This document shows, piece after piece, positions 1-33,183 of a DNA stretch of 64,000 bases. Origin of the DNA: Dendrobates tinctorius (Eukaryota); the NCBI RefSeq assembly GCF_039654945.1, contig NW_027361829.1, forward strand, positions 71,114,001 through 71,178,000, in the 5' to 3' direction. The notes under the pieces were generated by a model. It did no database searches. It was not told the DNA's origin and saw only the letters and a list, made by a program, of their open reading frames with translations. Each line of letters opens with the position of its first letter. Position 1 is the first letter of the stretch. The translations under genes and the position numbers were made by a program.

Positions 1-2585
1 TGGAGATGAATCTGTGCTGCTCAGTAGTGAGGCAGTGCTGTGGAGATGAATCTGTGCTGCACTTTATGTACATGCTCAGTAGTGAGGCAGTGCTGTGGAG
101 ATGAATCTGTGCTGCTCAGTAGTGAGGCAGTGCTGTGGAGATGAATCTGTGCTGCACTTTATGTACAGGCTCAGTAGTGAGGCAGTGATGTGGAGATGAA
201 TCTGTGCTGCACTTTATGTACATGCTCAGTAGTGAGGCAGGGCTGTGGAGATGAATCTGTGCTGCTTTTTATGTACAGGCTCAGTAGTGAGGCAGTGGTG
301 TGGAGATTAATCTGTGCTGCACTTTATGTACATGCTCAGTAGTGAGGCAGTGCTGTGGAGATGAATCTGTGCTGCACTTTATGTACATCCTCAGTAGTGA
401 GGCAGTGCTGTGGAGATGAATCTGTGCTGCACTTTATGTACATGCTCAGTAGTGAGGCAGTGCTGTGGAGATGAATCTGTGCTGCACTTTATGTACATCC
501 TCAGTAGTGAGGCAGTGCTGTGGAGATGAATCTGTGCTGCACTTTATGTACATGCTCAGTAGTGAGGCAGTGCTGTGGAGATGAATCTGTGCTGCACTTT
601 ATGTACATCCTCAGTAGTGAGGCAGTGCTGTGGAGATGAATCTGTGCTGCACTTTATGTACATGCTCAGTAGTGAGGCAGCGCTGTGGAGATGAATCTGT
701 GCTGCACTTTATGTACATCCTCAGTAGTGAGGCAGTGCTGTGGAGATGAATCTGTGCTGCACTTTATGTACATCCTCAGTAGTGAGGCAGTGCTGTGGAG
801 ATGAATCTGTGCTGCACTTTATGTACATGCTCAGTAGTGAGGCAGTGCTGTGGAGATGAATCTGTGCTGCACTTTATGTACATGCTCAGTAGTGAGGCAG
901 TGCTGTGGAGATGAATCTGTGCTGCACTTTATGTACATGCTCAGTAGTGAGGCAGCGCTGTGGAGATGAATCTGTGCTGCACTTTATGTACATCCTCAGT
1001 AGTGAGGCAGTGCTGTGGAGATGAATCTGTGCTGCACTTTATGTACATCCTCAGTAGTGAGGCAGTGCTGTGGAGATGAATCTGTGCTGCACTTTATGTA
1101 CATCCTCAGTAGTGAGGCAGTGCTGTGGAGATGAATCTGTGCTGCACTTTATGTACATGCTCAGTAGTGAGGCAGTGCTGTGGAGATGAATCTGTGCTGC
1201 ACTTTATTTACATGCTCAGTAGTGAGGCAGTGCTGTGGAGATGAATCTGTGCTGCACTTTATGTACATCCTCAGTAGTGAGGCAGCGCTGTGGAGATGAA
1301 TCTGTGCTGCACTTTATGTACATGCTCAGTAGTGAGGCAGTGCTGTGGAGATGAATCTGTGCTGCTCAGTAGTGAGGCAGTGATGTGGAGATGAATCTGT
1401 GCTGCACTTTATGTTCATGCTCAGTAGTGAGGCAGTGCTGTGGAGATGAATCTGTGCTGCACTTTATGTACATGCTCAGTAGTGAGGCAGTGCTGTGGAG
1501 ATGAATCAGTGCTGCACTTTATGTACATGCTCAGTAGTGAGGCAGGGCTGTGGAGATGAATCTGTGCTGCACTTTATGTACATCCTCAGTAGTGAGGCAG
1601 TGCTGTGGAGATGAATCTGTGCTGCACTTTATGTACATGCTCAGTAGTGAGGCAGTGCTGTGGAGATGAATCTGTGCTGCACTTTATGTACATGCTCAGT
1701 AGTGAGGCAGCGCTGTGGAGATGAATCTGTGCTGCACTTTATGTACATCCTCAGTAGTGAGGCAGTGCTGTGGAGATGAATCTGTGCTGCACTTTATGTA
1801 CATCCTCAGTAGTGAGGCAGTGCTGTGGAGATGAATCTGTGCTGCACTTTATGTACATCCTCAGTAGTGAGGCAGTGCTGTGGAGATGAATCTGTGCTGC
1901 ACTTTATGTACATGCTCAGTAGTGAGGCAGTGCTGTGGAGATGAATCTGTGCTGCACTTTATTTACATGCTCAGTAGTGAGGCAGTGCTGTGGAGATGAA
2001 TCTGTGCTGCACTTTATGTACATCCTCAGTAGTGAGGCAGCGCTGTGGAGATGAATCTGTGCTGCACTTTATGTACATGCTCAGTAGTGAGGCAGTGCTG
2101 TGGAGATGAATCTGTGCTGCTCAGTAGTGAGGCAGTGATGTGGAGATGAATCTGTGCTGCACTTTATGTTCATGCTCAGTAGTGAGGCAGTGCTGTGGAG
2201 ATGAATCTGTGCTGCACTTTATGTACATGCTCAGTAGTGAGGCAGTGCTGTGGAGATGAATCAGTGCTGCACTTTATGTACATGCTCAGTAGTGAGGCAG
2301 GGCTGTGGAGATGAATCTGTGCTGCACTTTATGTACATCCTCAGTAGTGAGGCAGTGCTGTGGAGATGAATCTGTGCTGCACTTTATGTACATGCTCAGT
2401 AGTGAGGCAGTGCTGTGGAGATGGATCTGTGCTGCACTTTATGTACATGCTCTGTAATGAGGCAGTGCTGTGGAGATGAATCTGTGCTGCACTTTATGTA
2501 CATGCTCAGTAGTGAGGCAGTGCTGTGGAGATGAATCTGTGCTGCACATTATGTGCATGCTCAGTAGTGAGGCAGTGCTGTGGAG
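1..2585. repeat. 55-bp tandem minisatellite (TGGAGATGAATCTGTGCTGCACTTTATGTACATGCTCAGTAGTGAGGCAGTGCTG) with occasional 40-bp deletion units; runs off the left edge
   Basis: Unit recurs with period 55 (e.g. TCTGTGCTGC at 421 and 476); 40-bp variants lack ACTTTATGTACATGC. Confidence 0.97.
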
Positions 2586-2641
2586 TTGGAGTCATGGAAA
2601 TGGAGGAGTCGGAGGTTTGGCTTACCGACTCCACAGCCCTA
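2586..2641 (-). mobile_element. Terminus of a non-autonomous hAT-type element (same family as 60744-61373)
   Basis: GGAGTCGGAGGTTTGGCTTACCGACTCCACAGCCCT is a near-exact reverse complement of the left end at 60744 (CAGGGCTGTGGAGTCGGTAAGCCAAACC). Confidence 0.8.
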
Positions 2642-3205
2642 TCTGAAACATCACATGCTGGCACAACAAAGCTACAGCCAGTGATTGGTTGCAGTGGTCA
2701 CGTTGTGTCGACACGTCATCACTTGAGCTGTAGATTGAATACCAATGGAGGACAAAATAAATGTCAGCAGTGGAGTAGCAGGGAATTGATAAGGAATTAT
2801 TCCCTTTAGTGTTTCATGTTGGAAGCGATTTCTTTATAATAAATCATGATGCCCCTTTAATACACAGCCCTGTGTAAGGTGCAGTTATTAAAGTACAATT
2901 TATATACTCATACATTCATTGAAGGTTTCGGTCCAGCTGGCAAGAAGCAGGTCCTCTGTGGTATAGGTACAGGGCTCCAGGATCCTGCGGTCAGTTACTT
3001 TATTGTTTGATTCCTTGGTTGAGATTTGCTCAGAAATCAGAGGCTTATTCTCCTCTAATTAAGAGGCTTACTGGTGTAAAGACGATTTGTCTGGTAATTC
3101 ACTTGCGCTACTTTATCTCCTTTATCTGCTACTGTGCCAAGTCTAGGTGACAGATAGTTCTCTGTATTTCTTGATTCTGTTTTAAATTTTATCGCAAATG
3201 TTTTA

Positions 3206-4733
3206 GCATTGCATAATGTATGGTGGGACTTTCAGGCCATAGTATGTGGTGGTGTATTGCTAGTGCATATCCCATTGCTGCAGTTCTCATTTCCAGTATT
3301 TCCCTACACAGCTGCGCTCTCGGCCACCTTTTATGCAAGAAATACGGTAACTAGAGACCAGTGCTAAGCTACAGCTGTGGCCCCTCCATACTCAATGTGG
3401 CCCCTTCATACTCACTGTGGCCCCTTCATACTCACTGTGGCCCCTCCATGCTCACTGTGGCCCCTCCATGCTCACTGTGGCCCCTCCATGCTCACTGTGG
3501 CCCCTCCATGCTCACTGTGGCCCCTCCATGCTCACTGTGGCCCCTCCATGCTCACTGTGGCCCCTCCATGCTCACTGTGGCTCCTCCATGCTCACTGTGG
3601 CTCCTCCATGCTCACTGTAGCCCCTCCATGCTCACTGTGGCCCCTCCATACTCACTGTGGCCCCTCCATACTCACTGTGGCTCCTCCATGCTCACTGTGG
3701 CTCCTCCATGCTCACTGTGGCTCCTCCATGCTCACTGTGGCTCCTCCATGCTCACTGTGGCTCCTCCATGCTCACTGTGGCTCCTCCATGCTCACTGTGG
3801 CTCCTCCATGCTCACTGTGGCCCCTCCATGCTCACTGTGGCCCCTCCATGCTCACTGTGGCCCCTTCATGCTCACTGTGGCCCCTTCATGCTCACTGTGG
3901 CCCCTTCATGCTCACTGTGGCCCCTTCATGCTCACTGTGGCCCCTTCATGCTCACTGTGGCCCCTTCATACTCACTGTGGCCCCTTCATACTCACTGTGG
4001 CCCCTTCATTCTCATCCATCATTATCCGTCTTGGTCTTAAGGGTAGTAATACCACCAAATTGTTATGGCTAGGATAACATCTATATTGACCTCTTATATG
4101 GACAAACCATAAAAGCCAATTAGTAGAGAAGAGCACATCTATAGGGGCCAAATCAGAATTCCAGGCCCACCAGACGAGAGCCCTGCATACTGCTTCCTAC
4201 GTGCCAGGCGCCTCTTCTGATACGTAGGCCCGGCAATACGTCATCATTGTGGCATGACGCATGTATGACATCGCTCCAGGCCAACTAATCAGAAGAGGCG
4301 TCGTTGACGCCGACCGGTAAGAAGAGGGCTGCTGGCCGGTGGTTACAGAATACTGATTTAAATGCTGGACCAGAGTCCTACAAATTGATTTACTCATCTC
4401 TACCAAATAGCTAGTGCGGCAGGAAAATTTCAGCTCACAGGCACTGACTAAAATTCTCAGCAAAATCTGCAACAAACCTGTGTGTGACCCATGATGATTG
4501 TGCCATGGATTTGTCACAGATTCCTAGCCAAATAGCCTATTTTCTCTGCACAAGGTAAGTCCTCATGTGGACGAAGCTGTAAAGCAGCGGTGGCGTGGAG
4601 CCAGTCTTGGACTCGTCTCCCGTAAATAGGACATGCCCAGTAATGATGCGCAGTGATCTTGGCCACACATATGACCCACAAGTGCTGGAGTCTGGTCTTC
4701 CAGCAACCTCTTTAATCTGCTTTTCCATTGGTT
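3206..4733 (+). repeat. Block A, left copy of a long direct duplication flanking the Penelope-like element
   Basis: Runs GCATTGCATAATGTATGG...TTTTCCATTGGTT; near-identical to 11214-12482 except for minisatellite length and scattered substitutions. Confidence 0.93.
3374..4010. repeat. 20-bp minisatellite (CTCACTGTGGCCCCTCCATG), about 32 units
   Basis: Directly visible periodicity; explains the repetitive ORFs in all three + frames. Confidence 0.97.
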
Positions 4734-5330
4734 TGAATCCAAAGGGAGTTTGTAGCTATATTCCGCGCTGCCGCTTTAGACAAATTCCAGGAGAACGCTG
4801 TATGATTGCAGTGGTTTTATTCTACGCGTTTCAGGGGTCTCATGCCCCCTTCATCAGGAAATACCACAAATACATACAGGTATCACAGTCATAAATAGGT
4901 TTGAAAGGATGCTGGATTTCAAAAAAATGAGCGCCAACAAGTCAGATGGTGCAGTGTCAAAGTTCAATGACACCACATGATTAACAGTTAACCTAAGATA
5001 TATTACAAAAGAATACGTATTTTAAAAGATTTTTTGATTAAATTTTCATTTACAAAACAGATAATAAAGTCAAATTTACGATTTAAACAAAAAAAAAAAA
5101 AAAAAAAAAGAAAAAGGGAAGGGGAGAGTTTATTCCTGTTTAGAGGTGGATACCTTACAAGTGGACTATCGTATGGAAACAGCAAACCGCTTTTTTTCAT
5201 TGAAAGCATTGCAATCTTTATACAAAAAGGGGAAAAAAGTAAAAACATAATTTTAATTCTTTACCAATAAAAAATATATAATTTTAGTTAAATTCTAAAA
5301 AATAAAATATAAAGTTATTTTTTAGTATAG
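4734..5330 (-). repeat. 3' pseudo-LTR (pLTR) of the PLE
   Basis: Direct repeat of 10627-11208 (TGAATCCAAAGGGAG...TTTTAGTATA). Confidence 0.9.
4811..4867 (-). ncRNA. Minimal type I hammerhead ribozyme in 3' pLTR
   Basis: Minus strand: GTGGTATTTC-CTGATGA-AGGGGGCATGAGACCCCT-GAAAC-GC-GTA-GAATAAAACCAC; conserved core, stem II AGGGG/CCCCT, palindromic ACGCGT stem III. Confidence 0.88.
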
Positions 5331-5669
5331 CGGAAATGGGTTTAAAAAATAATAAAGGATGCTAAAAGCAGCAACACACCAGAAGCTGCACAGCAGTCAG
5401 CGCTGCTCAGAATGAGAACGCAGACAGCATGGATTCATTACTTCACTAATACAAAGATCATGGGCAAATTTTAGATTTAACATGAAGCACATAAAAAAAG
5501 GGGGTTAATATCAGATGCAGCAACACACAGGACGCTGTGCAGGAGCCCACTACTGCTCAAAGTAAAAACGCAGGATAAAGCGGCAGAGTGAATGGGTGGC
5601 TTCATTAATAGATAAGATCGCAGGCAGCTTTTGTGTTCAACACGTGACACATAAGTCTTTACACTGTGA

Positions 5670-6048
5670 GGCTGTGTGCACACGCTGCGGATTTTGCTGC
5701 GGTTCCGCAGCGGTTTTGGCCGCTGCGGACCCGCAGCAGTTTCTGCTGCGGTGTACAGTACCATGATTCCCTATGGGAATCAAAAACCGCAGTGCAGACC
5801 GTGCGGAATTTTCCGCGCGGATTATCTGCGGTTTTCAATCCGCAGAAAGAATTGACATGTCAATTCTTTCTGCGGATTCTCCTGCGGTTTGCCATCTCCT
5901 CTATTGAGGAGATGAAAACCCGCAGGGCAAAACCGCAGAGCAATCCGCAGGTAAAACCGCAGGTCTTTTGACCTGCGGTTTCACCTGCGGATTTTACAAA
6001 ATCCGCGCGGATGAATCCGCACATAATCCGCAGCGTGTGCACGCAGCC
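5670..6048. mobile_element. PIF/Harbinger-type MITE inserted in PLE 3' region
   Basis: TIRs GGCTGTGTGCACACGCTGCGG / CCGCAGCGTGTGCACGCAGCC; 3-bp TSD TGA. Confidence 0.85.
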
Positions 6049-6769
6049 TGAAGGAGTGGCAGTAACATTCTTGCACTGTTCACTAATCTCTATGGCTAGG
6101 CAATATATGCATGGGAGCTGAGTTAAAGGAGAAATGAGATACTATTATCAGCCGGGGTCATTCTTTCATGTCAGACTAGTAGAATTAGTAGCGCTTACCC
6201 GGGCTTAATTAAAGAAGAAGAAAAAAAAAAAAAAAAAAACTTCAAAAAAATTTTTCTTCAAAAAATGCAACTAACAGAGATAATGTTTAAGACAGAGGTA
6301 TGAAAGTGATTGCTCCCAAGGGCAAAAGGAGCTAAACCTGATAGGAGGCTATACAGGATTTTCATATATATAACACTCTTTTAGAGCTAACGCACAAGTA
6401 ATATTTAAATAAATACATAAATAATTTTTTTCATTAGACCAAGGAGGCACAGTATTGTAAAATTAATTATAAATATAAATATAAAATTGCAATTAGGTAT
6501 TGCATAAAGTACAAACAAATCTATAAAAAATATATAAAAACCACAAGGCGGGGACTGCATAACTAGGTTAACATTATCAACAAGGGAAACTGACACAAAT
6601 AGTGCATGTAAAATTTTAAATTTAAATAGAACAAAGAGAAATTATCGCAAAGAACTCAGAAGCCATCTATGCACATGAGGGTTTTTTTGTTTTTTTTTTC
6701 TCTTTTCTTCCTTTTTTTTTCTCTGATTACAGAGCATGTGAATATGGGTGTGAACAAAAATTCCACTGT

Positions 6770-7596
6770 CTAGGTAAAAACCTCAGCTATTTCATTTAAA
6801 CCCTGTGGTTTCAGACTCCCTAATTTGTAGATCCAATAGGCTTCCTTTCTATTTAATTTCGTAGATCTGTTCGGTGCACATTTAGGTATATGATCGATAG
6901 GGCTAATTTTTAATAATTTCGAATTCTTATCATGTACCAAAGCGTAATGTCTGGACAGCCCATGAGTAAGCAGGCCTTTTTAATATTATGCCGATGGGAG
7001 TTCAATCTGAGGTGTAGGGGTTGTGTGGTCCTCCCTACATATTGCTTACCACAGGGACATTCAATGACATAAATGACAAAGTCAGAGTTACAATTTAGAA
7101 CAAAAGGGATCATAAATTTCTCTTTAGTAGAAAATGAAATTGTATAATTAGCTTTATGATTTATATTAGAACAGCATAAGCAGTTCCTCGTGCCACATTT
7201 AAAGATTCCTTTAGTTGAATTCAGGGTGTAACCGTTAATGGGGCTAGCATGAGCTCTCAGGCGGCTAGGGGCTATTAGATCCTTGATTGTGGGGGCTCTA
7301 CGGAATGTAACCCCGGGATTCCTAGGAAAGATATTGTTCAGAATGGGAGCGTTCAGTAATATATGCCAATTCTTATGAAAAATTATACGAATTTCATTAT
7401 GTTCAATGGAGAATTGCGTTATAAAATTCATTGAAAAGTTCTTATCAGTAATGACTTGCTCTTTAGGCTCCAGCAATGCTCTCTGATTTACTTTGAGAGA
7501 GTTTTTAAAGGCATTCTTAATTAAGTGTGAAGGGTATTTTTGGGCAAAAAATCTTTTCTTTAAAATATTGGACTGATCTTTAAAGTCAGTATCCAA
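6770..7596 (-). pseudogene. PLE C-terminal thumb/linker + GIY-YIG endonuclease (frameshifted)
   Basis: CGTRNCLCC...CNSDFVIYVIECPCGKQYVGRT...RLNSHR; after a frameshift it continues as EAYWIYKLGSLKPQGLNE to a TAG at ~6770. Confidence 0.9.
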
Positions 7597-9040
7597 TGAG
7601 CAGTTTTCTAATCCGGTGAAATTGATTGTTAGGAATGTTATTCAACCATTTGTTGTAGTGCCCACTATTAAAATGAATGTAGCCATTGGTGTCTACTTTT
7701 TTAAAAAACGTTTTGCTACATATTCTGTCTTCTTTAATAAAAAGGTTAATATCTAAAAAATTAATTAAAAGACTGCTGTAAGCTGCTGTAAAAGAAAGAT
7801 CCCAGTCGTTAGAATTTATTGTCTGAATAAAAGTTTCAACATTATTAGTGGAGTTGTCCCAGATAAAAAATAAATCATCAATGAATCTTTTATAAAAAAT
7901 AATATTTTTGCTCCAATTTTCATTCAAAATAAAAGAATTTTCAAAAATCCCCATGAAAAGGTTAGCGAAAGTAGGTGCTACCTTTGAGCCCATTGCGGTC
8001 CCCTTAACTTGTTGATAAAATATTTTTTCAAAGGTAAAAAAATTATTTTTCAATATAAAATCAATACCTTTTAAAATAAAATCCTTTTGAGCCAAAGAAA
8101 GTCTAATGTCAGATTTTAAAAAATGATGAAAACAATTCACACCTACATCATGTGGAATATTAGAATAAAGTGCAGTCACATCCATAGTAATGAAAACATA
8201 TTGTGGTTTCCAAGTGACTTCTTGGAGTAGATACAATAAATGAGTTGAGTCTCTGAGGTGACTTTTTAATTCAAATACATGCGGTAACATAATCCTATCA
8301 ATGTAATGAGCTAGATTAGAGGTTAGAGAGTTAATACCCGCAATTATCGGTCTGCCAGGGGGATTGCAAAGACCTTTATGTACTTTAGGTAAGTGATAAA
8401 AAAAAGGAATGCTTGGGTTTTTAATGCTTAACTTTTTTTCTTTATAATTGAAAATATTCTGGGAAAGACCCTCGATGATTAAAGCATTATAGGCTGTGAT
8501 AGATTTAGAATAATCGCTAAATGAGCTTTTAATATAGTAGCTAGTATCAGATAAAATTCTATGAGCTTCATTAATGTAATCACATCGATTTTGGATTACA
8601 ATCCCACCACCTTTATCAGCCTGTCTAATCACAATCAAACTGTTAAGAGAAAGGGATTTCAATGCTTGTTTCTCTTGTCTATTAAGATTAGGTTTCTTCC
8701 TTTTACTAATGTCCCTCCATGTTATTTTTTCAAGCTCTTTTTGTACAATATCGCTGAAGGCATTAATCTGATGACTTTTGTCCTCAAGGGGATAAAAATT
8801 AGATTTATAAGGTACATCGAGATGAAAAAGATCATGAACATCTTCATCCATTTCAGCAGAATCATTTGTGGTGTTTTTAGCAAAATGTCTTTTGAGAGTT
8901 AATTTTCTGATAAAAATCTGCAAGTCCAAAAAGAGGTCAAAATCCTTCGATTTATTATTAGGGCAGAAGGATAATCCTTTGGAGAGAAGGGCTGTCTCAC
9001 TACTAGTAAGGTCATAATCTGATAAATTAAAAATATTAGA
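7586..9040 (-). pseudogene. PLE reverse transcriptase domain
   Basis: IRQADKGG, FYHLPKVHK, PGRPII, MDVTALYSNIPH, GTAMGSKVAPTFANLFM, RFIDDLF, NFLD; upstream in-frame NLSDYDL...LSKGLSFCP. Confidence 0.95.
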
Positions 9041-9072
9041 AATATTAGGAGTATGACCCTCCTCCCTACTTG

Positions 9073-10382
9073 TTAAGGTAGTATTTTTCCTTTCTTTTTT
9101 TCTCCCACCTCTTGTTCCTCTAAAGCATTTTTTCTTTTTCCTTTTTTTGGAAGAAAGAACTGATTTACTTGAGGTGTGCTCTTGAGAGCATGGGGTAAAA
9201 AAGGCACGGTACCATTTTTGGAAACATTAGAGTTATCCAGTATAATGGTATTACTAATTTCTGAGGAAGTAATAGCACTTGTTGTGGCAATATTCACAGT
9301 ATCAAGCTCATTAGTATTGAAAGGTTGAGAGGGTAAAAGCATGCTTGGTGTAGTATCATGTATAGAGAAATCCAGTAATGAAATGGGGAGGGGGGAAAAT
9401 ACCGATAGGGAAACATTGCCCCCTTTCGTGGGTGGACAAGAATTTTTGAAGGTGGAGGACATTTTTACTTTTTCCATTTACTTATCAGCATTGTTTTTGT
9501 TAATCTGAATTTTAATCTTTTCAAGGTGTTCCCTTGCTTCAAGCAGGGTTTGGGAGTGATTAAGAAAAATCTTAATAAGAGCTTTGCCAGAGGATTTTGG
9601 AGTACTCATATTATCTGGGGGGATACTGGAGACAGAATTATTGTCCAGATTAGTAATATGAGTTTTGGCATGGAGGGGTTGTGGGCTAGATCCACCCGAA
9701 TCACCATTTGATTTCTTTATTTCTGTAAGAGATACAGTATAGGTCTGTTTATTAATAGGCTGTAGTAAAGCAGAATCATTATTAGCAGAAGCAATTAAAC
9801 AATTGTCCTTTAAGTTCTTATTCTTGTTAGTGTTTTTTCGTTTATAATCTTCCCTATCCCGCTGTAATTTGTTTGATTTCTTCATTATAGTGTCATTTTC
9901 TAGCTGCATAATAAATGTCGTCACATTTGAGTTTATTTTCCTATATTCTGGGTGCGCTATAAACGGTAACACATCATTGTGAATTTGTTTGATCTTAATT
10001 GTTGCTATATCGCAAAGCTGGGATCTCTTTTTAAAGAGGGCAGTTAACATTTCTGACATGCAAAATTATTTACAATATTATTCCAGTCATTTGTGAACTC
10101 ACAGTCATCCGGGAAGGGAGAATCATGTATTATTCTGAGACCTCTGGGGCAAATATTTTCTCTCAGATAAATCGAGAGAAAATGAGCATCCAGATGAAAG
10201 TGAAGTTCTTCTTTAAGTCCTTCCTTGAAACTATAAAATGTTTTACGAAGATTTCTAGTTTCTTCATCAGTAAATATGTGTTGATTTAGATCCACAGCAG
10301 AGCTGGGTTCAACACAACCAATTGTCTGTTTAATCAGGCGTTCTCTAGAGGTCAGTCGATTCTGAAAGTATTCCATAGTCAA
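9073..10382 (-). pseudogene. Disrupted N-terminal region of the PLE ORF
   Basis: Three consecutive minus-strand ORF pieces upstream of RT; FLSIYLRENICPRGLRI resembles the N-terminal motif of vertebrate PLE proteins. Confidence 0.65.
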
Positions 10383-10463
10383 AAGAGGAGAGAAAGTAAC
10401 GGACCCTCTGCTGCTGTGCAGTCTTGAACCAGGAGGATTTTCCCAGATCCTGCTAGTTGATAA

Positions 10464-10551
10464 CTATTGCAAAAAAAGGGGGGGGGAGACAAAAAGCGCA
10501 ATAGGGTCTTATCCACGTTACAAAGGACAGTATATCATGAAATATGCTCAC
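10464..10551 (-). other. Retained 88-bp spliceosomal intron in the PLE 5' leader
   Basis: Minus strand CAG|GTGAGC ... long pyrimidine tract ...TTTTTGCAATAG|. Confidence 0.7.
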
Positions 10552-10626
10552 CTGGTTAGGATGAGATAAGAGCGTGTAGGTAGCGGCTGCTGCAGATCCA
10601 CAGGTCTTCAGCGACCAAAGAAATCA

Positions 10627-11208
10627 TGAATCCAAAGGGAGTTTGTAGCTATATTCCGCGCTGCCGCTTTAGACAAATTCCAGGAGAATGCTGTATGATT
10701 GCAGTGGTTTTATTCTACACGTTTCAGGGGTCTCATGCCCCCTTCATCAGGAAATACCACAAAATACATACAGGTATCACAGACATAAATAGGTTTGAAA
10801 GGATGCTGGATTTCAAAAAAATGAGCGCCAGCAAGTCAGATGGTGCAGTGTCAAAGTTCAATGACACCACATGATTAACAGTTCACCTAGGATATATTAC
10901 AAAAGTATGCGTATTTTAAAAGATTTTTTGATTAAATTTTCATTTACAAAACAGATAATAAAGTCAAATTTACGATTTAAACAAAAAAAAAAAAAGGGAA
11001 GGGGAGAGTTTATTCCTGTTTAGAGGTGGATACCTTACAAGTGGACTATCGTATGGAAACAGCAAACCGCTTTTTTTCATTGAAAGCATTGCAATCTTTA
11101 TACAAAAAGGGGAAAAAATAAAAACATAATTTTAATTCTTTACCAATAAAAAATATATAATTTTAGTTAAATTCTAAAAAATTAAATATAAAGTTATTTT
11201 TTAGTATA
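10627..11208 (-). repeat. 5' pLTR of the PLE
   Basis: Direct repeat of 4734-5330. Confidence 0.9.
10704..10760 (-). ncRNA. Hammerhead ribozyme in 5' pLTR
   Basis: Same motif as 4811-4867 but GAAACGTGTA instead of GAAACGCGTA. Confidence 0.85.
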
Positions 11209-11213
11209 TGATT

Positions 11214-12482
11214 GCATTGCATAATGTATGGTGGGACTTTCAGGCCATAGTATGTGGTGGTATATTGCTAGTGCATATCCCATTGCTGCAGTTCTCAGTT
11301 CTAGTATTTCTCTACACAGCTGCGCTCTCGGCCACCTGTTATGCAAGAAATACGGTAACTAGAGACCAGTGCTAAGCTACAGCTGTGGCCCCTCCATACT
11401 CACTGTGGCCCCTCCATACTCACTGTGGCCCCTCCATACTCACTGTGGCCCGTTCATACTCACTGTGGCCCGTTCATACTCACTGTGGCCCCTTCATACT
11501 CACTGTGGCCCCTTCATACTCACTGTGGCCCCTTCATACTCACTGTGGCCCCTCCATGCTCACTGTGGCCCCTTCATGCTCACTGTGGCCCCTTCATGCT
11601 CACTGTGGCCCCTTCATGCTCACTGTGGCCCCTTCATGCTCACTGTGGCCCCTTCATGCTCACTGTGGCCCCTTCATGCTCACTGTGGCCCCTCCATACT
11701 CACTGTGGCCCCTCCATACTCACTGTGGCCCCTCCATACTCACTGTGGCCCCTTCATTCTCATCCATCATTATCCGTCTTGGTCTTAGGGGTAGTAATAC
11801 CACCAAATTGTTATGGCTAGGATAACATCTTTATTGACCTCTTATATGGACAAACCATAAAAGCCAATTAGTAGAGAAGAGCACATCTATAGAGGCCACA
11901 TCAGAATTCCAGACCCACCAGACGAGAGCCCTGCATACTGCTTCCTACGTGCTAGGCGCCTCTTCTGATACGTAGGCCCGGCAATACGTCATCATTGTGG
12001 CATGACGCATGTATGACATCGCTCCAGGCCAACTAATCAGAAGAGGCGTCAATGACGCCGACCGGTAAGAAGAGGGCTGCTGGCCGGTGGCTACAGAATA
12101 CTGATCTAAATGCTGGACCAGAGTCCTACAAATTGATTTACTCATCTCTACCAAATAGCTAGTGCAGCAGGAAAATTTCAGCTCACAGGCACTGACTAAA
12201 ATTCTCAGCAAAATCTGCAACAAACCTGTGTGTGACCCATGATGATTGTGCCATGGATTTGTCACAGATTCCTAGCCAAATAGCCTATTTTCTCTGCACA
12301 AGGCTACGTCCTCATGTGGACGAAGCTGTAAAGCAGCGGTGGCGTGGAGCCAGTCTTGGACTCGTCTCCCGTAAATAGGACATGCCCAGTAATGATGCGC
12401 AGTGATCTTGGCCACACATATGACCCACAAGTGCTGGAGTCTGGTCTTCCAGCAACCTCTTTAATCTGCTTTTCCATTGGTT
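11214..12482 (+). repeat. Block A', right copy of the long direct duplication; includes ~19 units of the 20-bp minisatellite (11382-11760)
   Basis: Near-identical to 3206-4733. Confidence 0.93.
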
Positions 12483-14397
12483 CGGGAATATGGAAAGGTG
12501 AGAGGCTGCAGACTTTATTCATCATTCATGGTGTGTCTACACCACCCTACTCGCTGCACTAGACCACCGCCGATCAGCTGCTTGCTAGTAGCCGGTTGTT
12601 TAATAACCTGTTTAATATGTGCACTTAGCCATCATTTCTAGATCATTTTGGTCATGTAGGCTGCCGTTGTTTTTGGCAGCACTGTGTACACATGTGCTGC
12701 CGAGAACAAATATTTTTATTTTTAAGCAAACCAAAAGATCGTTTGTCAGGTGACGGCAGCCTGGTTACACTGCATGTCAAGAAAGAGCTCCCAGAATAAT
12801 CGATCACTGATCGTTCTGTCTGAGGGTCATGTTGCCAATTGGAAGATGTTTAACGCCGGTCTAAACCCGAGCACCTCAGAAAACAGGATTATTTTCAATG
12901 ATCTACTTTTGAGGATTGTTCACACGACCATATTTTCAGTCTGAGTTCTGCCCATGAAAAAAAACATGGATAGTACTTGGACCAATATTATTCAATGGGG
13001 CAGTGTGGTTTCTTCTGTAAATCGAATGTGAATCACCCATTCAAGTCTATGGTTGGGAGAAAAATGCCGGATGCCGTACGGACCACAGCATTGCATCTGA
13101 TTTTTACCGATACATTGCAATTCTGTAACATAGGAAGCTGTAAACGATTAATAGCTGCTGGAAAAAATGGATTGTATGAAGATGATTGCACATGGATGAC
13201 AAGGGAGAAAAAATGTCTGCGTTTTCTGGATGAAGTCAATGATTTTTTTTTATGCTTTTCTGCGGAGTTTTGATCTGACACTATAGGCCATTTTCTAGCT
13301 CTGTGCAAATGGCTTTCATGCCATTGAGGTCTACATTTGGCAGCCGCTCCGTCCTGTGACAATCTCGGCAGCTGGCACTGTGATTCTGGGCTAGGATCAG
13401 CGTTCTGATGACTGCGGGCGCCGCTCCTAGCGACCTCCTGACATCAGTCAGAAAGGAGAGATGGGCTCATGTGTTTGTGGTGAGATCATCAGTGGGATCT
13501 CCAGCTGCACTCGGAATACTGCATCTACCCTGTGTCTACAGGAAAAAATGCCACTTCCTGAATCCGCACATGGAAGATGGGATAAATCCTTGGGCCGGGC
13601 CGTGTGTGCATCATGTCCTAGCATGACGGTATGGAAATCATGAAACAGGTTTCCTTGTTATTAATAGTGTCTAGTTAACCCATAAAAATCCTGCTTATTC
13701 TGTAGGATTAAGGACAAGTGTTTTATGTGTTGTTTTTTTATTTTGTTTCAGAATAAACATTTGTTTAAAGAAAAATTATTTAACAAAAATCACTATAGTA
13801 AGATGCCCCAGGTGTCTACAATATTACATTGTTGGGATAAACCTAGTCCCTCTAGAAATCAGTGAAAGGTCGGCTTCAGGGCCTCTGCCCTTTCTCTGTA
13901 GTTACCTGGCATGGTGACGTCCATGGGAGTCTCCACATTGATGTAAATATGGGTTAAGTGCGGTTCAGCTAATTTCCAAGTACAGCTACTATCCTATGGA
14001 CTTCAGCCACATTCTGCAGATTTCACTTGATTGCCTTTACAAAGAAAAACTCATGTATTTACCGTAATATCTGGAGATAAAACAACCATCAGCGAAAGAA
14101 CCACAAGGAGCGCCCCCTTCACTGCAGTGCCTGCACATAAACTTTACCCCTGGTGAAGCCACAGGTCTAGTGGTGATACATGGGGGGGGGGGGTGGGCGT
14201 TCTCCCTCTCTCCCTCCTCTCTACCAATTTACAGGTCCTTATTATACCCATTATCTTCTGGTCAACTGTGTTTTTTTTCATAACAGATGCTTAGTGCTTA
14301 TTTCCTCATTACAGGATTTATTATCTCCATTGGGTTCCATGCACTTGTTATTATCTCTAAATTTCTGCCAAGTATATTATTTAGTTTACTGAGGTAT

Positions 14398-15444: not shown

Positions 15445-15861
15445 GGTATTGTTACAGAACCAGATTTTTTCGTATATTGCTTGATAGTTTATACATTGTT
15501 TTGAACTGGCACTTAGAGGTGATTTGGGTCATTATTTTATTTAATTGTAAAGGGTAGGTTATGTGATACATCTTTGGCTTAAGTGAGTAGGTTATTAAAT
15601 TATTTGTATGTACTTCTTTTTCAGTTTGTGTTGATGGATAATCACTCCGTATAAGTTACCATTGGTCGTTCCCCTTAATAGTGATGCCCTCTTAGTTTAC
15701 CTTTTTCTATACCTAGCACATAGTCTAAAGGCCCTGTCACACTAAGCGAGATCGCTAGCGAGATCGCTGCTGAGTCACTAGAACTGTGACGTTATAGCGA
15801 TCTTACCAGCGAGATCGCTGTGTGTGACAGTGACCAGCGACCAGCCCCCCTGCCGGGTATC

Positions 15862-16598
15862 TGTTAGGGTGCCCGAGGGTGAACCCACTGGACCACGGCA
15901 GCGAACCTCCCCTGGGCGAGTGGACCACCCCCTATACAGGGAGTGTTAGGGACAAGCCCAGGGAAGACTATTACCGCGGCAGCTGGTACCCAGACAGCCG
16001 AAAACACAGGGTAGAACGGCCAGGTGACCGGATACTGGACCGGGGTAGCACGGCAGGAACACAGGAGACTGGACCAGGATAGGATGGCAGGAACACAGGA
16101 GACTAGACCAAGGTAGGACGGCAGGAACCCAGCAGACTGGACCAGGGTAGGACGGCAGGAACCCAGCAGACTGGACCAGGGTAGGACGGCAGGAACACAG
16201 CAGACTGGACCAGGGTAGGACGGCACACTGCATACACAGGAGATAGAAGGTAACAGCGCCGGGAGAAGGTAGGCAGGCGCCACACAGAGGAATCAGAAGA
16301 GGACGCCAGCAAGCGTGGGGCCAGAGTCACGGGGAGTGGTACCAATGACGATCAGGCAACGTCACTAGGGAGCGACGGCCTGATGTAGGAGAGTGGGGAG
16401 GGCTTCCGGGTCAGGAACCTCCTACCAGCAAGAGAGGCGACGGTTCAGAGAGGCAGTGCGCGCGCCCGTCGGGACCCACGGGGAGCGTGCGCCCGGGAGG
16501 CCGCAAGCAGCGCCAGAGGGGCAGGGGCACCGGCGGGACCGCGCAGGGGAGCGGTGGCCCGGTGAGACGGATGGGACGCAGGCGGCGGTGAGGTGACA
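15862..16598 (-). repeat. 3' LTR (737 bp, TGTCA...TAACA) with ~6 internal 34-bp repeats
   Basis: TG...CA termini, adjacent PPT, homology to 20606-21208. Confidence 0.92.
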
Positions 16599-19500
16599 GT
16601 ACCCCCCCCTTACGCTCCCCCCTCCCAAGGTTGGAAAGAAATCTTGCCAAAATCCGGGGAGCCTGAATGTTCTCCCGAGGTTCCCAAGATCTCTCTTCAG
16701 GGCCGAACCCCTTCCAATCGACCAAGAAAACGGTTTTTCCCCTAAGCCTCTTCATGGCGAGAATGTCTTTAACCTCAAAGACATCATCGGCGGAAATGGG
16801 CTGTGGAGTGCGGGTGGTAGAGGCATGGAACTGGTTGAGGACCACAGGTTTCAGAAGAGAAACATGAAACGAATTGGGGATGCGAAGCGAGGCAGGGAGC
16901 TTTAACTTGTAAGAGACATCGTTGATGCGGGACAGGACCTCGAAGGGTCCAATAAACCGAGGACCCAATTTGTGTGAAGGGAGCCTAAGGCGGATGAACC
17001 TGGAGGATAACCACACTCTATCGCCAGGATGGTAGAGAGGTGGGTCCAAGCGCCTCTTGTCTGCGTGTCTCTTCATCTTAACCTGAGCTTGTTCGAGGGC
17101 GGTTTTGGTCTCCTGCCAGATCCTGGAGAACTCCCCAGACAGAAGATCAGCGGCCGGCACACCCGAGACAGGAGGAACTGGTAGCGGTACGCCTGGATGT
17201 AGACCATAGACAATAAAGAAGGGAGATTTGGCTGAAGATTCGTTAGCATAGTTGTTGTATGCAAATTCGGCCCAAGGGAGCAAGTCTGACCAGTCGTTCT
17301 GGTGAGCGTTGGAAAAGTGACGGAGGTAATTGACCAAAATTTGGTTGGTACGCTCTGCTTGACCGTTAGTTTGAGGGTGATATGCAGAGGAGAAATCCAG
17401 TGTGACGTCCATAAACTTGCAGATCGCCCTCCAAAATCGGGAGGTGAACTGGACTCCTCTATCAGAGACAATACGTTGAGGAAGCACGTGGAGACGAAAA
17501 ATATGGTGGACAAAAATCTTCGCCAATTCGGGAGCCGAGGGTAATCCAGACAGAGGAACGAAATGAGCCATCTTGGAGAACCTGTCCACGACGACTAAGA
17601 CGACTGTATATCCAGAGGAACGAGGCAGGTCAGTGACAAAATCCATGGCAATGTGCTGCCAGGGAGCCGAAGGGACTGGTAGCGGGTGCAGAAGACCAGA
17701 AGGTAATTGCCTGGGGACCTTGTTTTTGGCACAGGATGGACACGAGGCTAAAAAATTACGAACATCCTGGAGAAGAGTAGGCCACCAATAGTAGCGCGAG
17801 ACCAGAAGAAGAGTCTTTTTCAACCCCACATGGCCTGCAATCTTAGAAGAGTGGCCCCAATGCAAGACTCGTCTCCTGTTGGTTACCGGAACGAAGGTCT
17901 TACCCGGTGGCAGGGTAGACAGAGTGAGGGGAGCCACCGTAATGATCTTGGAGGGATCCAGGATGTGCGCAGGGGCCTCCTCAGTGTCGACGGCAAGAAA
18001 GGATCTGGACAATGCATCAGCCTTAAGGTTCTTCCTACCCGGGCAGAAGTGCAGTTCGAAATCGAAACGGGCGAAAAACAAGGACCATCTTGCCTGTCGA
18101 GGGTTAAGTCTCTGTGCCGATCGGATGTAAGCCAGATTTTTATGGTCCGTGTAGACTTTAAAAGGATACACTGCTCCCTCCAAAAGGTATCGCCATTCTT
18201 GCAATGCCATCTTAATGGCCAAAAGCTTCCTGTCACCAAAAGAGTAGTTCCGTTCGGGAGCCGAAAACGTTTTCGAGAAGAAGCCACAGGTGACAAGATG
18301 CCCGGAGGGGGATCTCTGAGAGAGTACGGCTCCGACGCCGATGGCAGAGGCGTCCACCTCCAAAATGAAAGGTTTGTTAGTCTCTGGGCGGTGAAGGACT
18401 GGAGCAGAAGCAAAGGCTCGCTTTAGGGCTAAGAAGGACGCCTCGGCCTCGGACGACCAGACGTGCGGGTTGGCCCCCTTACGAATCAGAGAGGTGATGG
18501 GAGCGGTCAAGGAAGAAAAATGGGGGATGAATTGCCGGTAGTAGTTGGCAAAACCCAGGAATCGTTGGATTGCCTTGACTCAATGCGGTTGTGGCCAGTT
18601 GAGTACGGCTGACACCTTCTGTGGATCCATGCTCAGGCCGGAATCTGAAACAATGTACCCCAGGAACTGAAGAGAGGTCTATTCAAAGGAGCATTTCTCC
18701 AGTTTTGCATAAAGGTGATTCTCCCGTAGGTGAGAGAGGACCAGACGAACACTCCTCCTATGGGCCGCCAGATCCGAGGAAAAGACAAGAATATCGTCCA
18801 GATATACCACCACACAAGAGTAAAGGAGGTCTTGGAAAATGTCATTCACGAATTCTTGGAACACTGCGGGAGCGTTGCAGAGGCCGAAGGGCATGACCAA
18901 ATATTCATAGTGACCGTCCCTGGTGTTGAACGCGGTCTTCCATTTGTCACCAGGGCGAATGCGGATAAGATTGTAGGCCCCACGCAGGTCTAGTTTGGTG
19001 AAGATTCGTGCCCCCCGCAATCGATCAAATAGCTCAGGAATGAGAGGAAGCGGGTACTTGTTCTTGATAGTGATGTCATTCAGGCCCCTGTAGTCGATCC
19101 ACGGGCGAAGAGTCCCCATCCTTCTTCTTCACAAAAAAGAAGCCCGCACCTGCGGGTGAAGTAGACTTCCGAATAAAGCCTTTATCCAGGGCCTCCTGGA
19201 CGTACTCTGACATGGCTTGAGTCTCCAGAGGATTCAACGGATAAATTCGGCCCCGGGGTGGAGAGGAGCCCAGAACGAGGTTGATGGAGCAGTCATAGGG
19301 ACGAAGGGGTGGCAGGCATTCGGCCCCCTTCTTGTTGAAAACGTCAGCGAAGGACCAATAGGCAGAAGGCAAGCCCACGGGCGCCACTGGAGTTCTAGGA
19401 GACTTGATGGGCAGAACTGGAAGAAGACACGAAGAGTGGCACGACTGACCCCACCGAAGGATGTCTCCGGATCGCCAATCAAGAACGGGTTCATGGGTCC

Positions 19501-19612
19501 TTAACCATGGGAGGCCTAAGAGTAACGTGTGAGAGAGCAAGGGCAATACCAGGAAAGTTATCTTCTCCCGATGTAGAGCTCCGACTTGTAACTCCACCTC
19601 TTCGGTGACCAA
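16599..19612 (-). pseudogene. Gypsy pol (partial protease, RT, RNase H, integrase, chromodomain), frameshifted
   Basis: [29 protein letters not shown]; EVDASAIGVGAVL; HHCC zinc finger, MDFVTDLP, VSDRGVQF, QTNGQAER, GPF; chromodomain FEVKDIL...FLVDWKGFGPEERSWEP. Confidence 0.95.
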
Positions 19613-20592
19613 TGTTACAACCTCCAGAGACAGAGACCTTTGTCGAACTTCTCCTGGCGACGTTGCTCTGCCGGTTTGAGACGATCTACATGCATGGGTT
19701 CCGAAGCCAAGGCAGCGGAGGTAGAGGGAAACCGCGGAACGGAAGGACTGCGGGTTGCTAGGGAAACGCGGGGAAATCTTCTCTCCCTGGCGGACTCGCG
19801 GGAGCGCTCCTGGAAGCGCAAGTCAATGCGCGTCGCCAAGGAAATGAGATCCTCTAGGGTCGTGGGAGTGTCGCGACCCGCTAGCTCATCCTTTAATGCG
19901 CGGGGATAGGCCGCGCCAGAATGCTCCCACCAACGCCTCATTGTTCCAGCCGAGCTCCGAGGACAAGGTGCGAAACTGGATAGCATATTGCCCTACAGAA
20001 AGAGTACCCTGGCGAAGATTAAAGAGGGACTCCGTAGTTGAAGCCAGGCGTCCAGGTTCGTCAAAGACCTTTCGAAAGGTCTCGAGGAACGTGGAGAGCT
20101 GGGAGACCACCGGGTCATCCCGCTCCCAGAGAGGGTTTACCCAGGCCAATGCCTCACCCTCCAGGTGGGATACCACAAAGGCCACCTTGGCACGGTCTGT
20201 AGGATATTGGTGAGGCAGCAATTCGAAGTGCAATTGGCACTGATTGAGGAACCCGCTGCATAATCGGGGGTCACCGCCATACCGCGGAGCCTTAGCTAAC
20301 CAGGGGGGCTGGATGTGGAGACGGGGCCGGAGCAGGGACAGCCGCAGCAGACTGGAGCGCAAGGAGTCGGTTATCCACCGAAGCCATATAGTTTAAAATA
20401 TGACCCTGGGTATCGCGTTGCTGGGCGAGCTCCTGCAGGAGACTGGCCAGCTGCGACGCACTTCCGGGATCCGAGGGCTGTAGGGCTGATAACCGGGACT
20501 CCATGGATTTTAGGAAGGTCATGATCCGGGCCTGATTCTCGGAGGGTCGCCAGCTCCTTCTGGGTGGTTGCTGAGGTACCAGCGGGATTCAT
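19613..20592 (-). pseudogene. Gypsy gag (PEG10/RTL1-like retrotransposon gag), frameshifted and truncated at the zinc knuckle
   Basis: PRYGGDP...GFLNQC...GEALAW...LRQGTLSVGQYAIQFRTL...WNNEAL; ATG at 20592 just after the PBS position. Confidence 0.9.
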
Positions 20593-20605
20593 GGCCTGAT
20601 CGTAC

Positions 20606-21208
20606 TGTTAGGGTGCCCGAGGGTGAACCCACTGGACCACGGCAACGAACCTCCCCTGGGCGAGTGGACCAGGTGGACCACCCCCTATACAGGGAGTGTT
20701 AGGGACAGGCCCAGGGAAGACTATTACCGCGACAGCTGGTACCCAGACAGCCGAAAACACAGGGTAGAACGGCCAGGTGACCGGATACTGGACCGGGGTA
20801 GCACGGCAGGAACACAGGAGACTGGACCAGGATAGGATGGCAGGAACACAGGAGACTGGACCAAGGTAGGACGGCAGGAACACAGCAGACTGGACCAGGG
20901 TAGGACGGCAGGAACACAGCAGACTGGACCAGGGTAGGACAGCAGGAACACAGCAGACTGGACCAGGGTAGGACGGCAGGAACACAGCAGACTGGACCAG
21001 GGTAGGACGGCAGGAACACAGCAGACTGGACCAGGGTAGGACGGCAGGAACAAAGCAGACTGGACCAGGGTAGGACGGCACACTGCAAACACAGGAGATA
21101 GAAGGTAACAGTGCCGGGAGAAGGTAGGCAGGCGCCACACAGAGGAATCAGAAGAGGACGCCAGCAAGCGTGGGGCCAGAGTCACGGGGAGTAGTACCAA
21201 TGACGATC
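20606..21208 (-). repeat. 5' LTR lacking U3, with ~9 internal 34-bp repeats
   Basis: Matches 15862-16353; homology stops at ...CCAATGACGATC. Confidence 0.9.
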
Positions 21209-32848: not shown

Positions 32849-33183
32849 GGGTATGTGCACTCGTTGCGGATTTGCCCCGCAGATCCGCTGCAGTTTTCCA
32901 TGCGGTGTACAGTACTATGTAAACCTATGGAAAACCAAATCCGCTGTGCACATGCTGCGGAAAATTCAGTGCAGATTTGCTGCGGTTTATTTTCCACAGC
33001 ATGTCAATTTTTTGTGCGGAATCCGCAGCGATTTTACACCTCTTCTATTATAGGAAACCGCAGGTGTAAAAACGCAGGGGAAATCTGCACTAAATCCACA
33101 GAAAATCCGCAGGAAATCCACAGGTAAAACGCAGGTCATTTTACCTGCGGACGCAGCCAAATCCACAACGTGTGCACATACCC
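32849..33183. mobile_element. Harbinger-type MITE
   Basis: GGGTATGTGCAC / GTGCACATACCC TIRs, TAA TSD; related to 5670-6048. Confidence 0.85.

What the first reader, a model, noticed from the sequence alone, without database searches (positions are those of the whole stretch)
3206..12482. Penelope-like element flanked by a ~1.3-1.5 kb direct duplication: possible giant target-site duplication
Seen: the layout is A(3206-4733)-pLTR-body-pLTR-A'(11214-12482). A ends exactly where the pLTR begins, and A' starts within ~5 bp of the other pLTR. By eye, A/A' differ by scattered substitutions at a level similar to the two pLTRs. Known: retroelement TSDs are normally a few to tens of bp. Inference: widely staggered GIY-YIG nicks, or repair synthesis during insertion, duplicated more than 1 kb of host DNA. 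This would make PLEs generators of kb-scale segmental duplications.
Basis: partly seen in the sequence, partly recalled or inferred. Interest (0 to 1): 0.8.

Follow-up and report, generated by a model that had tools for sequence, protein, structure and literature searches.

The report
Penelope element between 1.4-kb target copies
A dead Penelope-type jumping gene in a poison-frog genome sits exactly between two copies of a 1.3-1.5 kb stretch of neighbouring DNA, most likely because its insertion duplicated the landing site about a hundred times more than usual, something seen before for LINE elements but unproven here.

Summary
The layout is real. Block A (3206-4733) and A' (11214-12482) are direct copies. 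Each has a 169-bp head, a 20-bp minisatellite (32 versus 19 units) and a 719-bp unique tail. Between them lies a degenerate Penelope-like element on the minus strand (4734-11208), with RT and GIY-YIG domains and 596/582-bp pseudo-LTRs that carry a hammerhead core. A abuts one pLTR exactly. A' follows the other after 5 bp (TGATT).

A/A' differ at 17 of 888 sites (1.9%) and the pLTRs at 9 of 581 (1.55%). That fits a single age, though power is low. There is no short duplication at the outer edges. A shows no LTR, hammerhead or tRNA-like features, no similarity to the element and no other copy in the window.

An insertion-coupled kb-scale target-site duplication is the most economical reading (about 0.55). 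It is not proven.

Kb-scale duplications of this kind are documented for LINEs: L1 up to 5.3 kb, ZfL2-2 1228 bp, Dualen about 900 bp. This would be a new member of a known kind, not a new mechanism. First readers of this scan noted 144-bp and about 295-bp duplications beside Penelope elements elsewhere in this genome; these are unchecked.

The parts
2586..3205 (.). Left flank W. It is unique in the window apart from a 67-bp repeat fragment and lies between a 55-bp satellite and A.
3206..4733 (+). Block A, the left copy of the duplicated target: head 3206-3374, 20-bp minisatellite 3375-4014 (32 units), unique tail 4015-4733.
4734..5329 (-). The element's 3' pseudo-LTR (596 bp). It abuts A with no extra base.
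4829..4857 (-). Hammerhead-ribozyme core (CUGAUGA, helix II, GAAA) in the 3' pLTR. An identical core lies at 10722-10750 in the 5' pLTR.
   Evidence: Motif scan, sequence, fold. Rfam does not call it.
5330..6778 (-). 1.45-kb non-coding region between the end of the RT-endonuclease gene and the 3' pLTR. It holds a palindrome-rich, MITE-like piece at 5669-6049.
6779..9034 (-). RT plus GIY-YIG endonuclease gene (ORF2). The frame is broken near 7604-7608 and near 6976-6982.
   Evidence: Pfam, frog PLE relatives, tblastn map.
9073..10382 (-). Upstream ORF pieces (ORF1-like), with a frame change near 10044-10059 and a stop at 9478-9480. No Pfam match.
10627..11208 (-). The element's 5' pseudo-LTR (582 bp). 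It is a 5'-truncated upstream unit of the usual partial tandem.
11209..11213 (.). 5 extra bases (TGATT) at the element's 5' junction. They match the last 5 bp of A (TGGTT) at 4 of 5 positions.
11214..12482 (+). Block A', the right copy of the duplicated target: head 11214-11382, 20-bp minisatellite 11383-11762 (19 units), unique tail 11763-12482.
12483..13500 (.). Right flank Y. It is unique in the window and shares nothing with W's end or with the pLTR.

Best explanation
A Penelope-like retrotransposon inserted by target-primed reverse transcription into a site W-A-Y.

Proposed steps:
1. The plus strand was nicked at the right end of A, after what is now 4733. That 3' end primed copying of the element RNA, giving the exact A|pLTR junction.
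2. The minus strand was opened about 1.3-1.5 kb away, at the left end of A (3205|3206), instead of the usual roughly 10-20 bp. The cut could have come from the element's GIY-YIG endonuclease, or it could have been an unrelated nick or repair or replication end.
3. That end primed second-strand synthesis. It joined the cDNA with 5 extra bases (TGATT).
4. Filling in the two long single-stranded overhangs left one copy of A on each side of the element.

Shown: the anatomy, the junctions, the equal divergence of the two repeat pairs, and the nature of the element. Inferred: that A was single before insertion, and where the two strands were opened and by what.
For: - The repeats are nested and direct. 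Outer A/A' abut inner pLTR/pLTR exactly, at 0 and 5 bp.
- Extra bases occur only at the element's 5' junction. This is the side where target-primed insertions usually carry them (PMC2666801).
- A/A' differ at 17/888 sites and the pLTRs at 9/581, Fisher p = 0.56.
- Both minisatellites begin and end with the same variant units but differ inside. The array therefore predates the duplication, and the copies have evolved apart since, which also argues against a trivial assembly copy.
- There is no short duplication at the outer edges W|A and A'|Y.
- A has no hammerhead core, no tRNA-like part, no similarity to the element, no LTR-type ends and no other copy, even a diverged one, in the remaining 62 kb.
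- Kb-scale target duplications are a documented outcome of the same insertion chemistry in LINEs: L1 up to 5.3 kb (PMC5223499), ZfL2-2 1228 bp (PMC2666801), Dualen median 900 bp (PMC9977147).
Against: - No empty site, no read support and no genome-wide copy number of A could be obtained.
- Some small sequencing runs hold 6-36% of the words of 2600-5400. Some part of that stretch may therefore be repeated or transcribed, and I could not tell which part.
- TGATT matches the last 5 bp of A at 4 of 5 positions. That could be a decayed ordinary 5-bp target duplication of an insertion into an already tandem A-A'.
- The divergence test has low power. The two rates could differ up to about threefold.
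- Published PLE target duplications are short, 8-10 bp (PMC3846280).
Confidence: 0.55

Rival explanations
1. A was already a tandem duplication (W-A-A'-Y). The element later inserted at, or within 5 bp of, the A|A' joint, making an ordinary 5-bp target duplication (TGGTT, now TGATT on the right).
For: TGATT after the 5' pLTR matches the last 5 bp of A at 4 of 5 positions. By my own calculation the chance of exactly 4 matches is about 1.5%. The region is rich in tandem repeats.
Against: The insertion would have to hit a target about 10 bp wide. The tandem duplication would also have to be about as old as the insertion, because the divergences are equal. Only two A copies exist, and nothing suggests that the joint is a preferred target.
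Confidence: 0.17
2. A is itself an RNA-derived or mobile unit. The Penelope reverse transcriptase copied A RNA, then element RNA, then A RNA again by template jumping. On this reading 3206-12482 is one composite insertion into W|Y.
For: PLE enzymes make head-to-tail multimers and can mobilise foreign sequences (PMC3846280; PMC8557442). Both A copies are full length with identical ends, and the joints are end-to-end.
Against: There is no duplication at the outer edges. A has no 3'-end similarity to the element, no hammerhead and no tRNA-like promoter. There is no other copy of A in the window. In published cases the captured sequence lies between the pLTRs, not outside them (PMC3846280).
Confidence: 0.13
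3. A later rearrangement unrelated to insertion placed a second A beside an ordinary insertion. Candidates are replication template switching, or a duplication of A plus element followed by loss of one element copy.
For: Direct repeats and minisatellites favour such events. The divergence test cannot exclude a somewhat younger A/A' pair.
Against: It needs two breakpoints that both fall exactly on the element's ends. No second element copy or remnant follows A'.
Confidence: 0.08
4. Assembly artefact. The second A, or the placement of the element between two A copies, does not exist in the animal.
For: No reads could be laid. Published work warns that PLE structures cause assembly problems, mainly in short-read assemblies (PMC8557442).
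Against: There are no gaps in the stretch. A and A' differ at 17 sites and by 13 minisatellite units, in the pattern of separately evolving copies. Both joints are unique sequences that would need chimeric reads to arise. Four runs of one sample hold 74% of the words of 2600-5400, but they may be the source data.
Confidence: 0.05

Closest known systems
Kb-scale target-site duplications of human L1 in cultured cells (Servant et al. 2017, PMC5223499; also Gilbert 2002/2005 and Symer 2002 as cited there)
   Same: A retroelement inserted by target-primed reverse transcription is flanked by direct copies of the target measuring hundreds of bp to 5.3 kb. These are explained by a second-strand break far from the first nick.
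   Different: L1 uses an APE-type endonuclease. The events are de novo in cell culture and are frequent only when nucleotide excision repair is defective. Here the element is a GIY-YIG Penelope-like element, and the insertion is old and carried in the germline.
ZfL2-2 (zebrafish LINE) insertion with a 1228-bp target duplication in DT40 cells (Suzuki et al. 2009, PMC2666801)
   Same: Nearly the same length of duplication. It was a rare outlier (1 of 25 insertions in wild-type cells) among short duplications. Extra bases at 5' junctions are common.
   Different: It is an experimental LINE insertion whose empty site is known. Here the empty site is unknown.
Dualen-4b_cRei insertions with flanking duplications of median 900 bp in Chlamydomonas mutation-accumulation lines (Lopez-Cortegano et al. 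2023, PMC9977147)
   Same: Flanking duplications of about 1 kb arise at insertion in whole organisms.
   Different: In Dualen it is a family habit, seen in more than half of insertions, and is attributed to two endonucleases. Here it is one locus of a PLE family with no other copies in hand.
Canonical endonuclease-bearing Penelope-like insertions (Arkhipova et al. 2013, PMC3846280; Craig et al. 2021, PMC8557442)
   Same: An RT plus C-terminal GIY-YIG gene, a partial tandem that gives pLTRs, a hammerhead core in the pLTR, and a long non-coding spacer before the 3' pLTR as in Pen1_Av.
   Different: Reported target duplications are 0-10 bp in Adineta vaga. Here the flanking repeat is 1.3-1.5 kb.
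R9 rDNA-specific LINE of rotifers with a 126-bp target duplication (Gladyshev and Arkhipova 2009, as cited in PMC8557442 and PMC9977147)
   Same: An exceptionally long duplication made at insertion.
   Different: It has a fixed length, is site-specific and is a property of the family. It is ten times shorter.

Membership tests
Penelope-like element (endonuclease-bearing) | Reverse transcriptase domain related to PLE RTs | tested here: met
   Pfam RVT_1 on 7586-8929 minus strand. The best relatives are frog PLE proteins, E = 1e-117, 55% identity.
Penelope-like element (endonuclease-bearing) | GIY-YIG endonuclease C-terminal to the RT | tested here: met
   Pfam GIY-YIG on 6910-7596 minus strand. 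Relatives align on to 6779 across a frame break.
Penelope-like element (endonuclease-bearing) | Pseudo-LTRs from a partial head-to-tail tandem | tested here: met
   4734-5329 and 10627-11208 are direct repeats differing at 9/581 substitutions.
Penelope-like element (endonuclease-bearing) | Hammerhead ribozyme in the pLTR | tested here: inconclusive
   A CUGAUGA, helix II, GAAA core with a plausible helix I lies on the sense strand of both pLTRs. Rfam gives no hammerhead match even at E = 10, and the fold z-score is only -1.0.
Target-site duplication made at insertion | Direct repeats of non-element DNA abut both ends of the insertion | tested here: met
   0 bp at the 3' junction and 5 bp at the 5' junction.
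Target-site duplication made at insertion | The repeat is as old as the insertion | tested here: met
   1.9% versus 1.55%, p = 0.56. Power is low.
Target-site duplication made at insertion | The repeat is present once at the empty site | not testable with these tools
No frog genome DNA search is on hand. Protein look-ups were blank.
Target-site duplication made at insertion | The repeat does not travel with the element at other loci | tested here: inconclusive
   There is no other copy of the element or of A in the window. No family member above 55% protein identity is in the collection, so no other locus could be examined.
LTR retrotransposon with A as its LTR | TG...CA ends, 4-6 bp duplication at the outer edges, primer-binding site next to the LTR | tested here: not met
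   A starts GCATTG and ends TTGGTT. The outer flanks TTTTA and CGGGA differ. No tRNA-type primer site was seen by eye (inference).
Non-autonomous PLE partner or retrozyme (A as a mobile unit) | 3' end shared with the autonomous element, a hammerhead, multiple copies, own target duplication | tested here: not met
   No similarity of A to the element, no hammerhead core in A, no other copy in the window, no outer duplication. Genome-wide copy number is untested.

The most novel reading that the evidence does not exclude
In this frog genome, Penelope-like elements have a long-tailed distribution of target duplications, from about 15 bp through 10^2 bp to more than 1 kb. This would arise because the second-strand break in GIY-YIG-driven insertion is loosely coupled to the first nick. 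PLEs, very abundant in frogs, would then be a recurrent source of small segmental duplications, including promoter-like CpG-rich DNA such as the core of block A.
Probability: 0.15. Interest if true: 0.7.

Novelty: new member of a known kind. Interest (0 to 1): 0.42.

Why it matters
If confirmed, this would be the first documented kb-scale target duplication for a Penelope-like element, and a naturally fixed germline one. That would extend a phenomenon known from LINE assays to a retroelement class with a different endonuclease. It would also bear on how second-strand cleavage is positioned in PLE insertion, which is not understood.

Such insertions duplicate host DNA. Here that includes a minisatellite and a small CpG-rich core. 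They also leave 1.3-kb direct repeats that can later recombine and erase the insertion, so they may be under-counted in genomes. As a single unverified locus it does not show that PLEs are notable makers of segmental duplications.

Tried and rejected
**Tried without result**
After that, no query holding 6673-6729 was sent to any search tool, and masked those places. Other local scripts compared short queries against the window file already on the script machine.
- Exact look-ups of four ORFs (two in A and A', two in the element): not on record.
- Word-based protein searches with an ORF of A's unique tail and with the ORF that spans the A|pLTR joint: no relatives. These are non-coding ORFs, so a blank says little.
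- Metagenome scan with a 29-base piece of A: no match, as expected for frog DNA.
- Rfam: no hammerhead or other credible family. The miRNA-like hits at 5869-6000 are palindromes far below the gathering score.

**Considered and rejected**
- A as an LTR: wrong ends and no outer duplication.
- Unequal crossing-over between pLTRs: it duplicates the body, not A.
- Recombination between two flanking element copies: no element copies lie outside A and A'.
- 3' transduction plus partial tandem: the upstream unit would have to be truncated exactly at the pLTR|A boundary.
- Rolling-circle or circular permutation: neither can give the order A-P-body-P-A with all parts direct.
Full report
**Observation**

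A self-comparison of the window shows two nested pairs of direct repeats.
- The outer pair is A (3206-4733) and A' (11214-12482).
- The inner pair is 4734-5329 and 10627-11208.
- A ends at 4733 and the inner repeat begins at 4734. The other inner repeat ends at 11208 and A' begins at 11214, with TGATT between them.
- Similarity stops sharply at all four outer boundaries.

A is not uniform. It has a 169-bp head, a 20-bp minisatellite (32 units in A, 19 in A') and a 719-bp unique tail. The minisatellite accounts for the whole length difference of 1528 versus 1269 bp.

**What lies between the copies**

The stretch between the copies is a Penelope-like element on the minus strand.
- Pfam finds RVT_1 in 7586-8929 and GIY-YIG in 6910-7596.
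- The nearest proteins are frog PLE proteins. The best is from Anomaloglossus baeobatrachus at 55% identity.
- These proteins align from 9034 to 6779 across two frame breaks, near 7604-7608 and 6976-6982.
- Upstream ORF pieces (10382-9073) are also broken.
- The inner repeats are the pseudo-LTRs of the usual partial tandem (PMC8557442).
- Both carry, on the element's sense strand, a hammerhead core: CUGAUGA, a 5-bp helix II, then GAAA, followed by CGCG and GUA, with a plausible helix I. Rfam's models do not call it, so I list it as a motif only.
- A 1.45-kb non-coding stretch separates the gene from the 3' pLTR. It recalls the 0.9-1.5 kb spacers of Pen1_Av (PMC3846280).

Earlier notes of this scan name the genome as the dyeing poison frog. 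I did not test this.

**Age**

Substitution divergence:

| Pair | Differences |
|---|---|
| A/A' head | 5/169 |
| A/A' unique tail | 12/719 |
| A/A' together | 17/888 (1.9%) |
| pLTRs | 9/581 (1.55%), plus three indel events |

The Fisher test gives p = 0.56. The two repeat pairs are therefore compatible with one age. With so few differences, a two- to threefold difference cannot be excluded.

Both minisatellites start with the same variant unit (..TCCATACTCA) and end with the same one (..TTCATTCTCA), but their interiors differ. The array existed before the duplication, and the copies have evolved separately since. The number of frame breaks in the element is about what roughly 0.8% of change per copy would give (inference).

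**What A is not**
- A has no other copy in the remaining 62 kb of this repeat-rich window, even a diverged one (nhmmer).
- It has no similarity to the element, no hammerhead core and no tRNA-like part.
- It does not begin or end like an LTR.
- The 80 bp left of A and right of A' share nothing that could be a short target duplication of a larger composite insertion.
- A does contain a small CpG-rich core (4150-4350, observed/expected 0.9). I could not interpret it.

**Mechanism**

With the element on the minus strand, the first-strand cDNA is plus-strand sequence.
1. A plus-strand nick at the right end of A gives the 3' end that primes reverse transcription. This explains the exact A|pLTR joint.
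2. If the minus strand was opened at the left end of A, the two 3' overhangs are each one A long.
3. The minus-strand end primes second-strand synthesis on the cDNA. This is the junction where extra bases are common in LINE insertions (PMC2666801), and it is where TGATT sits here.
4. Fill-in then gives A-element-A'.

This is the standard geometry of a target-site duplication with a stagger of about 1.3-1.5 kb. I cannot tell what opened the second strand. It may have been the GIY-YIG endonuclease acting far away, or an unrelated nick or a replication or repair end, as proposed for L1 in repair-deficient cells (PMC5223499).

**Rivals**

(a) Pre-existing tandem. The element may have inserted at the joint of an A-A' tandem that was already there.
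- In favour: TGATT resembles the last five bases of A (TGGTT) at four of five positions. It could be a decayed ordinary 5-bp duplication.
- Against: the hit must fall within about 10 bp, and the tandem must be about as old as the insertion.

(b) Composite insertion. A could be an RNA copied before and after the element RNA by template jumping.
- In favour: PLE enzymes do make multimers and move foreign sequences (PMC3846280).
- Against: A shows none of the marks of a partner element, and there is no outer duplication.

(c) A later rearrangement would need two breakpoints exactly on the element's ends.

(d) An assembly artefact is unlikely given the pattern of differences between the copies, but it is untested.

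My odds are 0.55 for an insertion-coupled duplication, 0.17 for (a), 0.13 for (b), 0.08 for (c) and 0.05 for (d).

**What could not be done**

It was meant to show which parts of W, A, pLTR and body are repeated in other runs, and whether contigs cross the joints.
- The run search showed that four runs of one sample hold 74% of the words of 2600-5400. Some small runs hold 6-36%. So some part of that stretch may be repeated or transcribed, and I cannot say which part. The pLTR alone is 21% of the stretch.
- Protein-based routes to other copies, to the same locus in other individuals, or to other members of the family were all blank. So was a metagenome scan.
- The empty site, the genomic copy number of A and read support therefore remain open.

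**Comparison with what is known**

Published PLE target duplications are short: 8, 9 and 10 bp, or none, in Adineta vaga (PMC3846280). Long ones are well documented for LINEs, which use the same insertion chemistry.
- L1 in HeLa cells shows duplications over 100 bp in under 10% of events. In cells lacking nucleotide excision repair the median is 1495 bp and the maximum 5.3 kb (PMC5223499).
- One of 25 ZfL2-2 insertions in wild-type DT40 cells had a 1228-bp duplication (PMC2666801).
- Dualen-4b insertions in Chlamydomonas lines carry flanking duplications with a median of 900 bp (PMC9977147).

The phenomenon itself is therefore known. What would be new is its occurrence with a GIY-YIG element, as an old insertion retained in a germline genome. 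The authors of the L1 study point out that such long direct repeats invite recombination that removes the insertion (PMC5223499). That may explain why few are seen.

**Earlier notes of this scan**

First readers noted, on other pieces of the same genome (all unchecked):
- an exact 144-bp duplication flanking an element they describe as intact;
- a duplication of about 295 bp around a truncated Penelope;
- another Penelope insertion with a "long" duplication.

A follow-up accepted a 392-bp duplication around a retrocopy, but found that nothing linked it to Penelope elements. These are leads for a survey, not support.

**Verdict**

The giant target-site duplication is the most economical reading but is unproven. 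It would be a new member of a known kind of event, and the generalisation to PLEs as a class is not supported by one locus.

Noticed in passing
window 1-2585: A 2.6-kb satellite of 55-bp units. Units with a 40-bp period occur at 73-155, 1323-1405 and 2078-2160, giving a higher-order pattern. I did not check whether it is the same repeat.
   Followed up: no
window 5669-6049: A palindrome-rich, MITE-like piece inside the element's 3' non-coding region. It has 37-bp inverted ends (5669-5705 / 6013-6049), a perfect 42-bp palindrome at 5837-5878 and another at 5942-5993. A 75% similar piece lies at 32866-32988. It may be a nested insertion. Rfam's weak miRNA-like hits here are these palindromes.
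   Followed up: partly
window 4829-4857 and 10722-10750 (minus strand): A hammerhead core in both pLTRs that Rfam's covariance models miss even at E = 10. After GAAA comes CGCG and then GUA, which looks like a very short helix III.
   Followed up: partly
window 4150-4350 and 11898-12098: A small CpG-rich core (observed/expected 0.85-0.9) kept in both copies of A. It has CCAAT-like and TGACGCA-like motifs and a consensus donor-like CAAG|GTAAGT near 4551-4560. This could be a promoter or first-exon remnant, or an old repeat. If it is a promoter, the event duplicated it.
   Followed up: no
window 15861-16225 and 20605-21080: Two 92% similar stretches, each with a 34-bp tandem array (16007-16225; 20787-21080). 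They bracket the Gypsy-type ORFs at 16411-20362 and are probably its LTRs.
   Followed up: no
window 5330-6778: 1.45 kb of non-coding DNA lies between the end of the RT-endonuclease gene and the 3' pLTR. It resembles the 0.9-1.5 kb spacers of captured host DNA described for Pen1 of Adineta vaga (PMC3846280).
   Followed up: no
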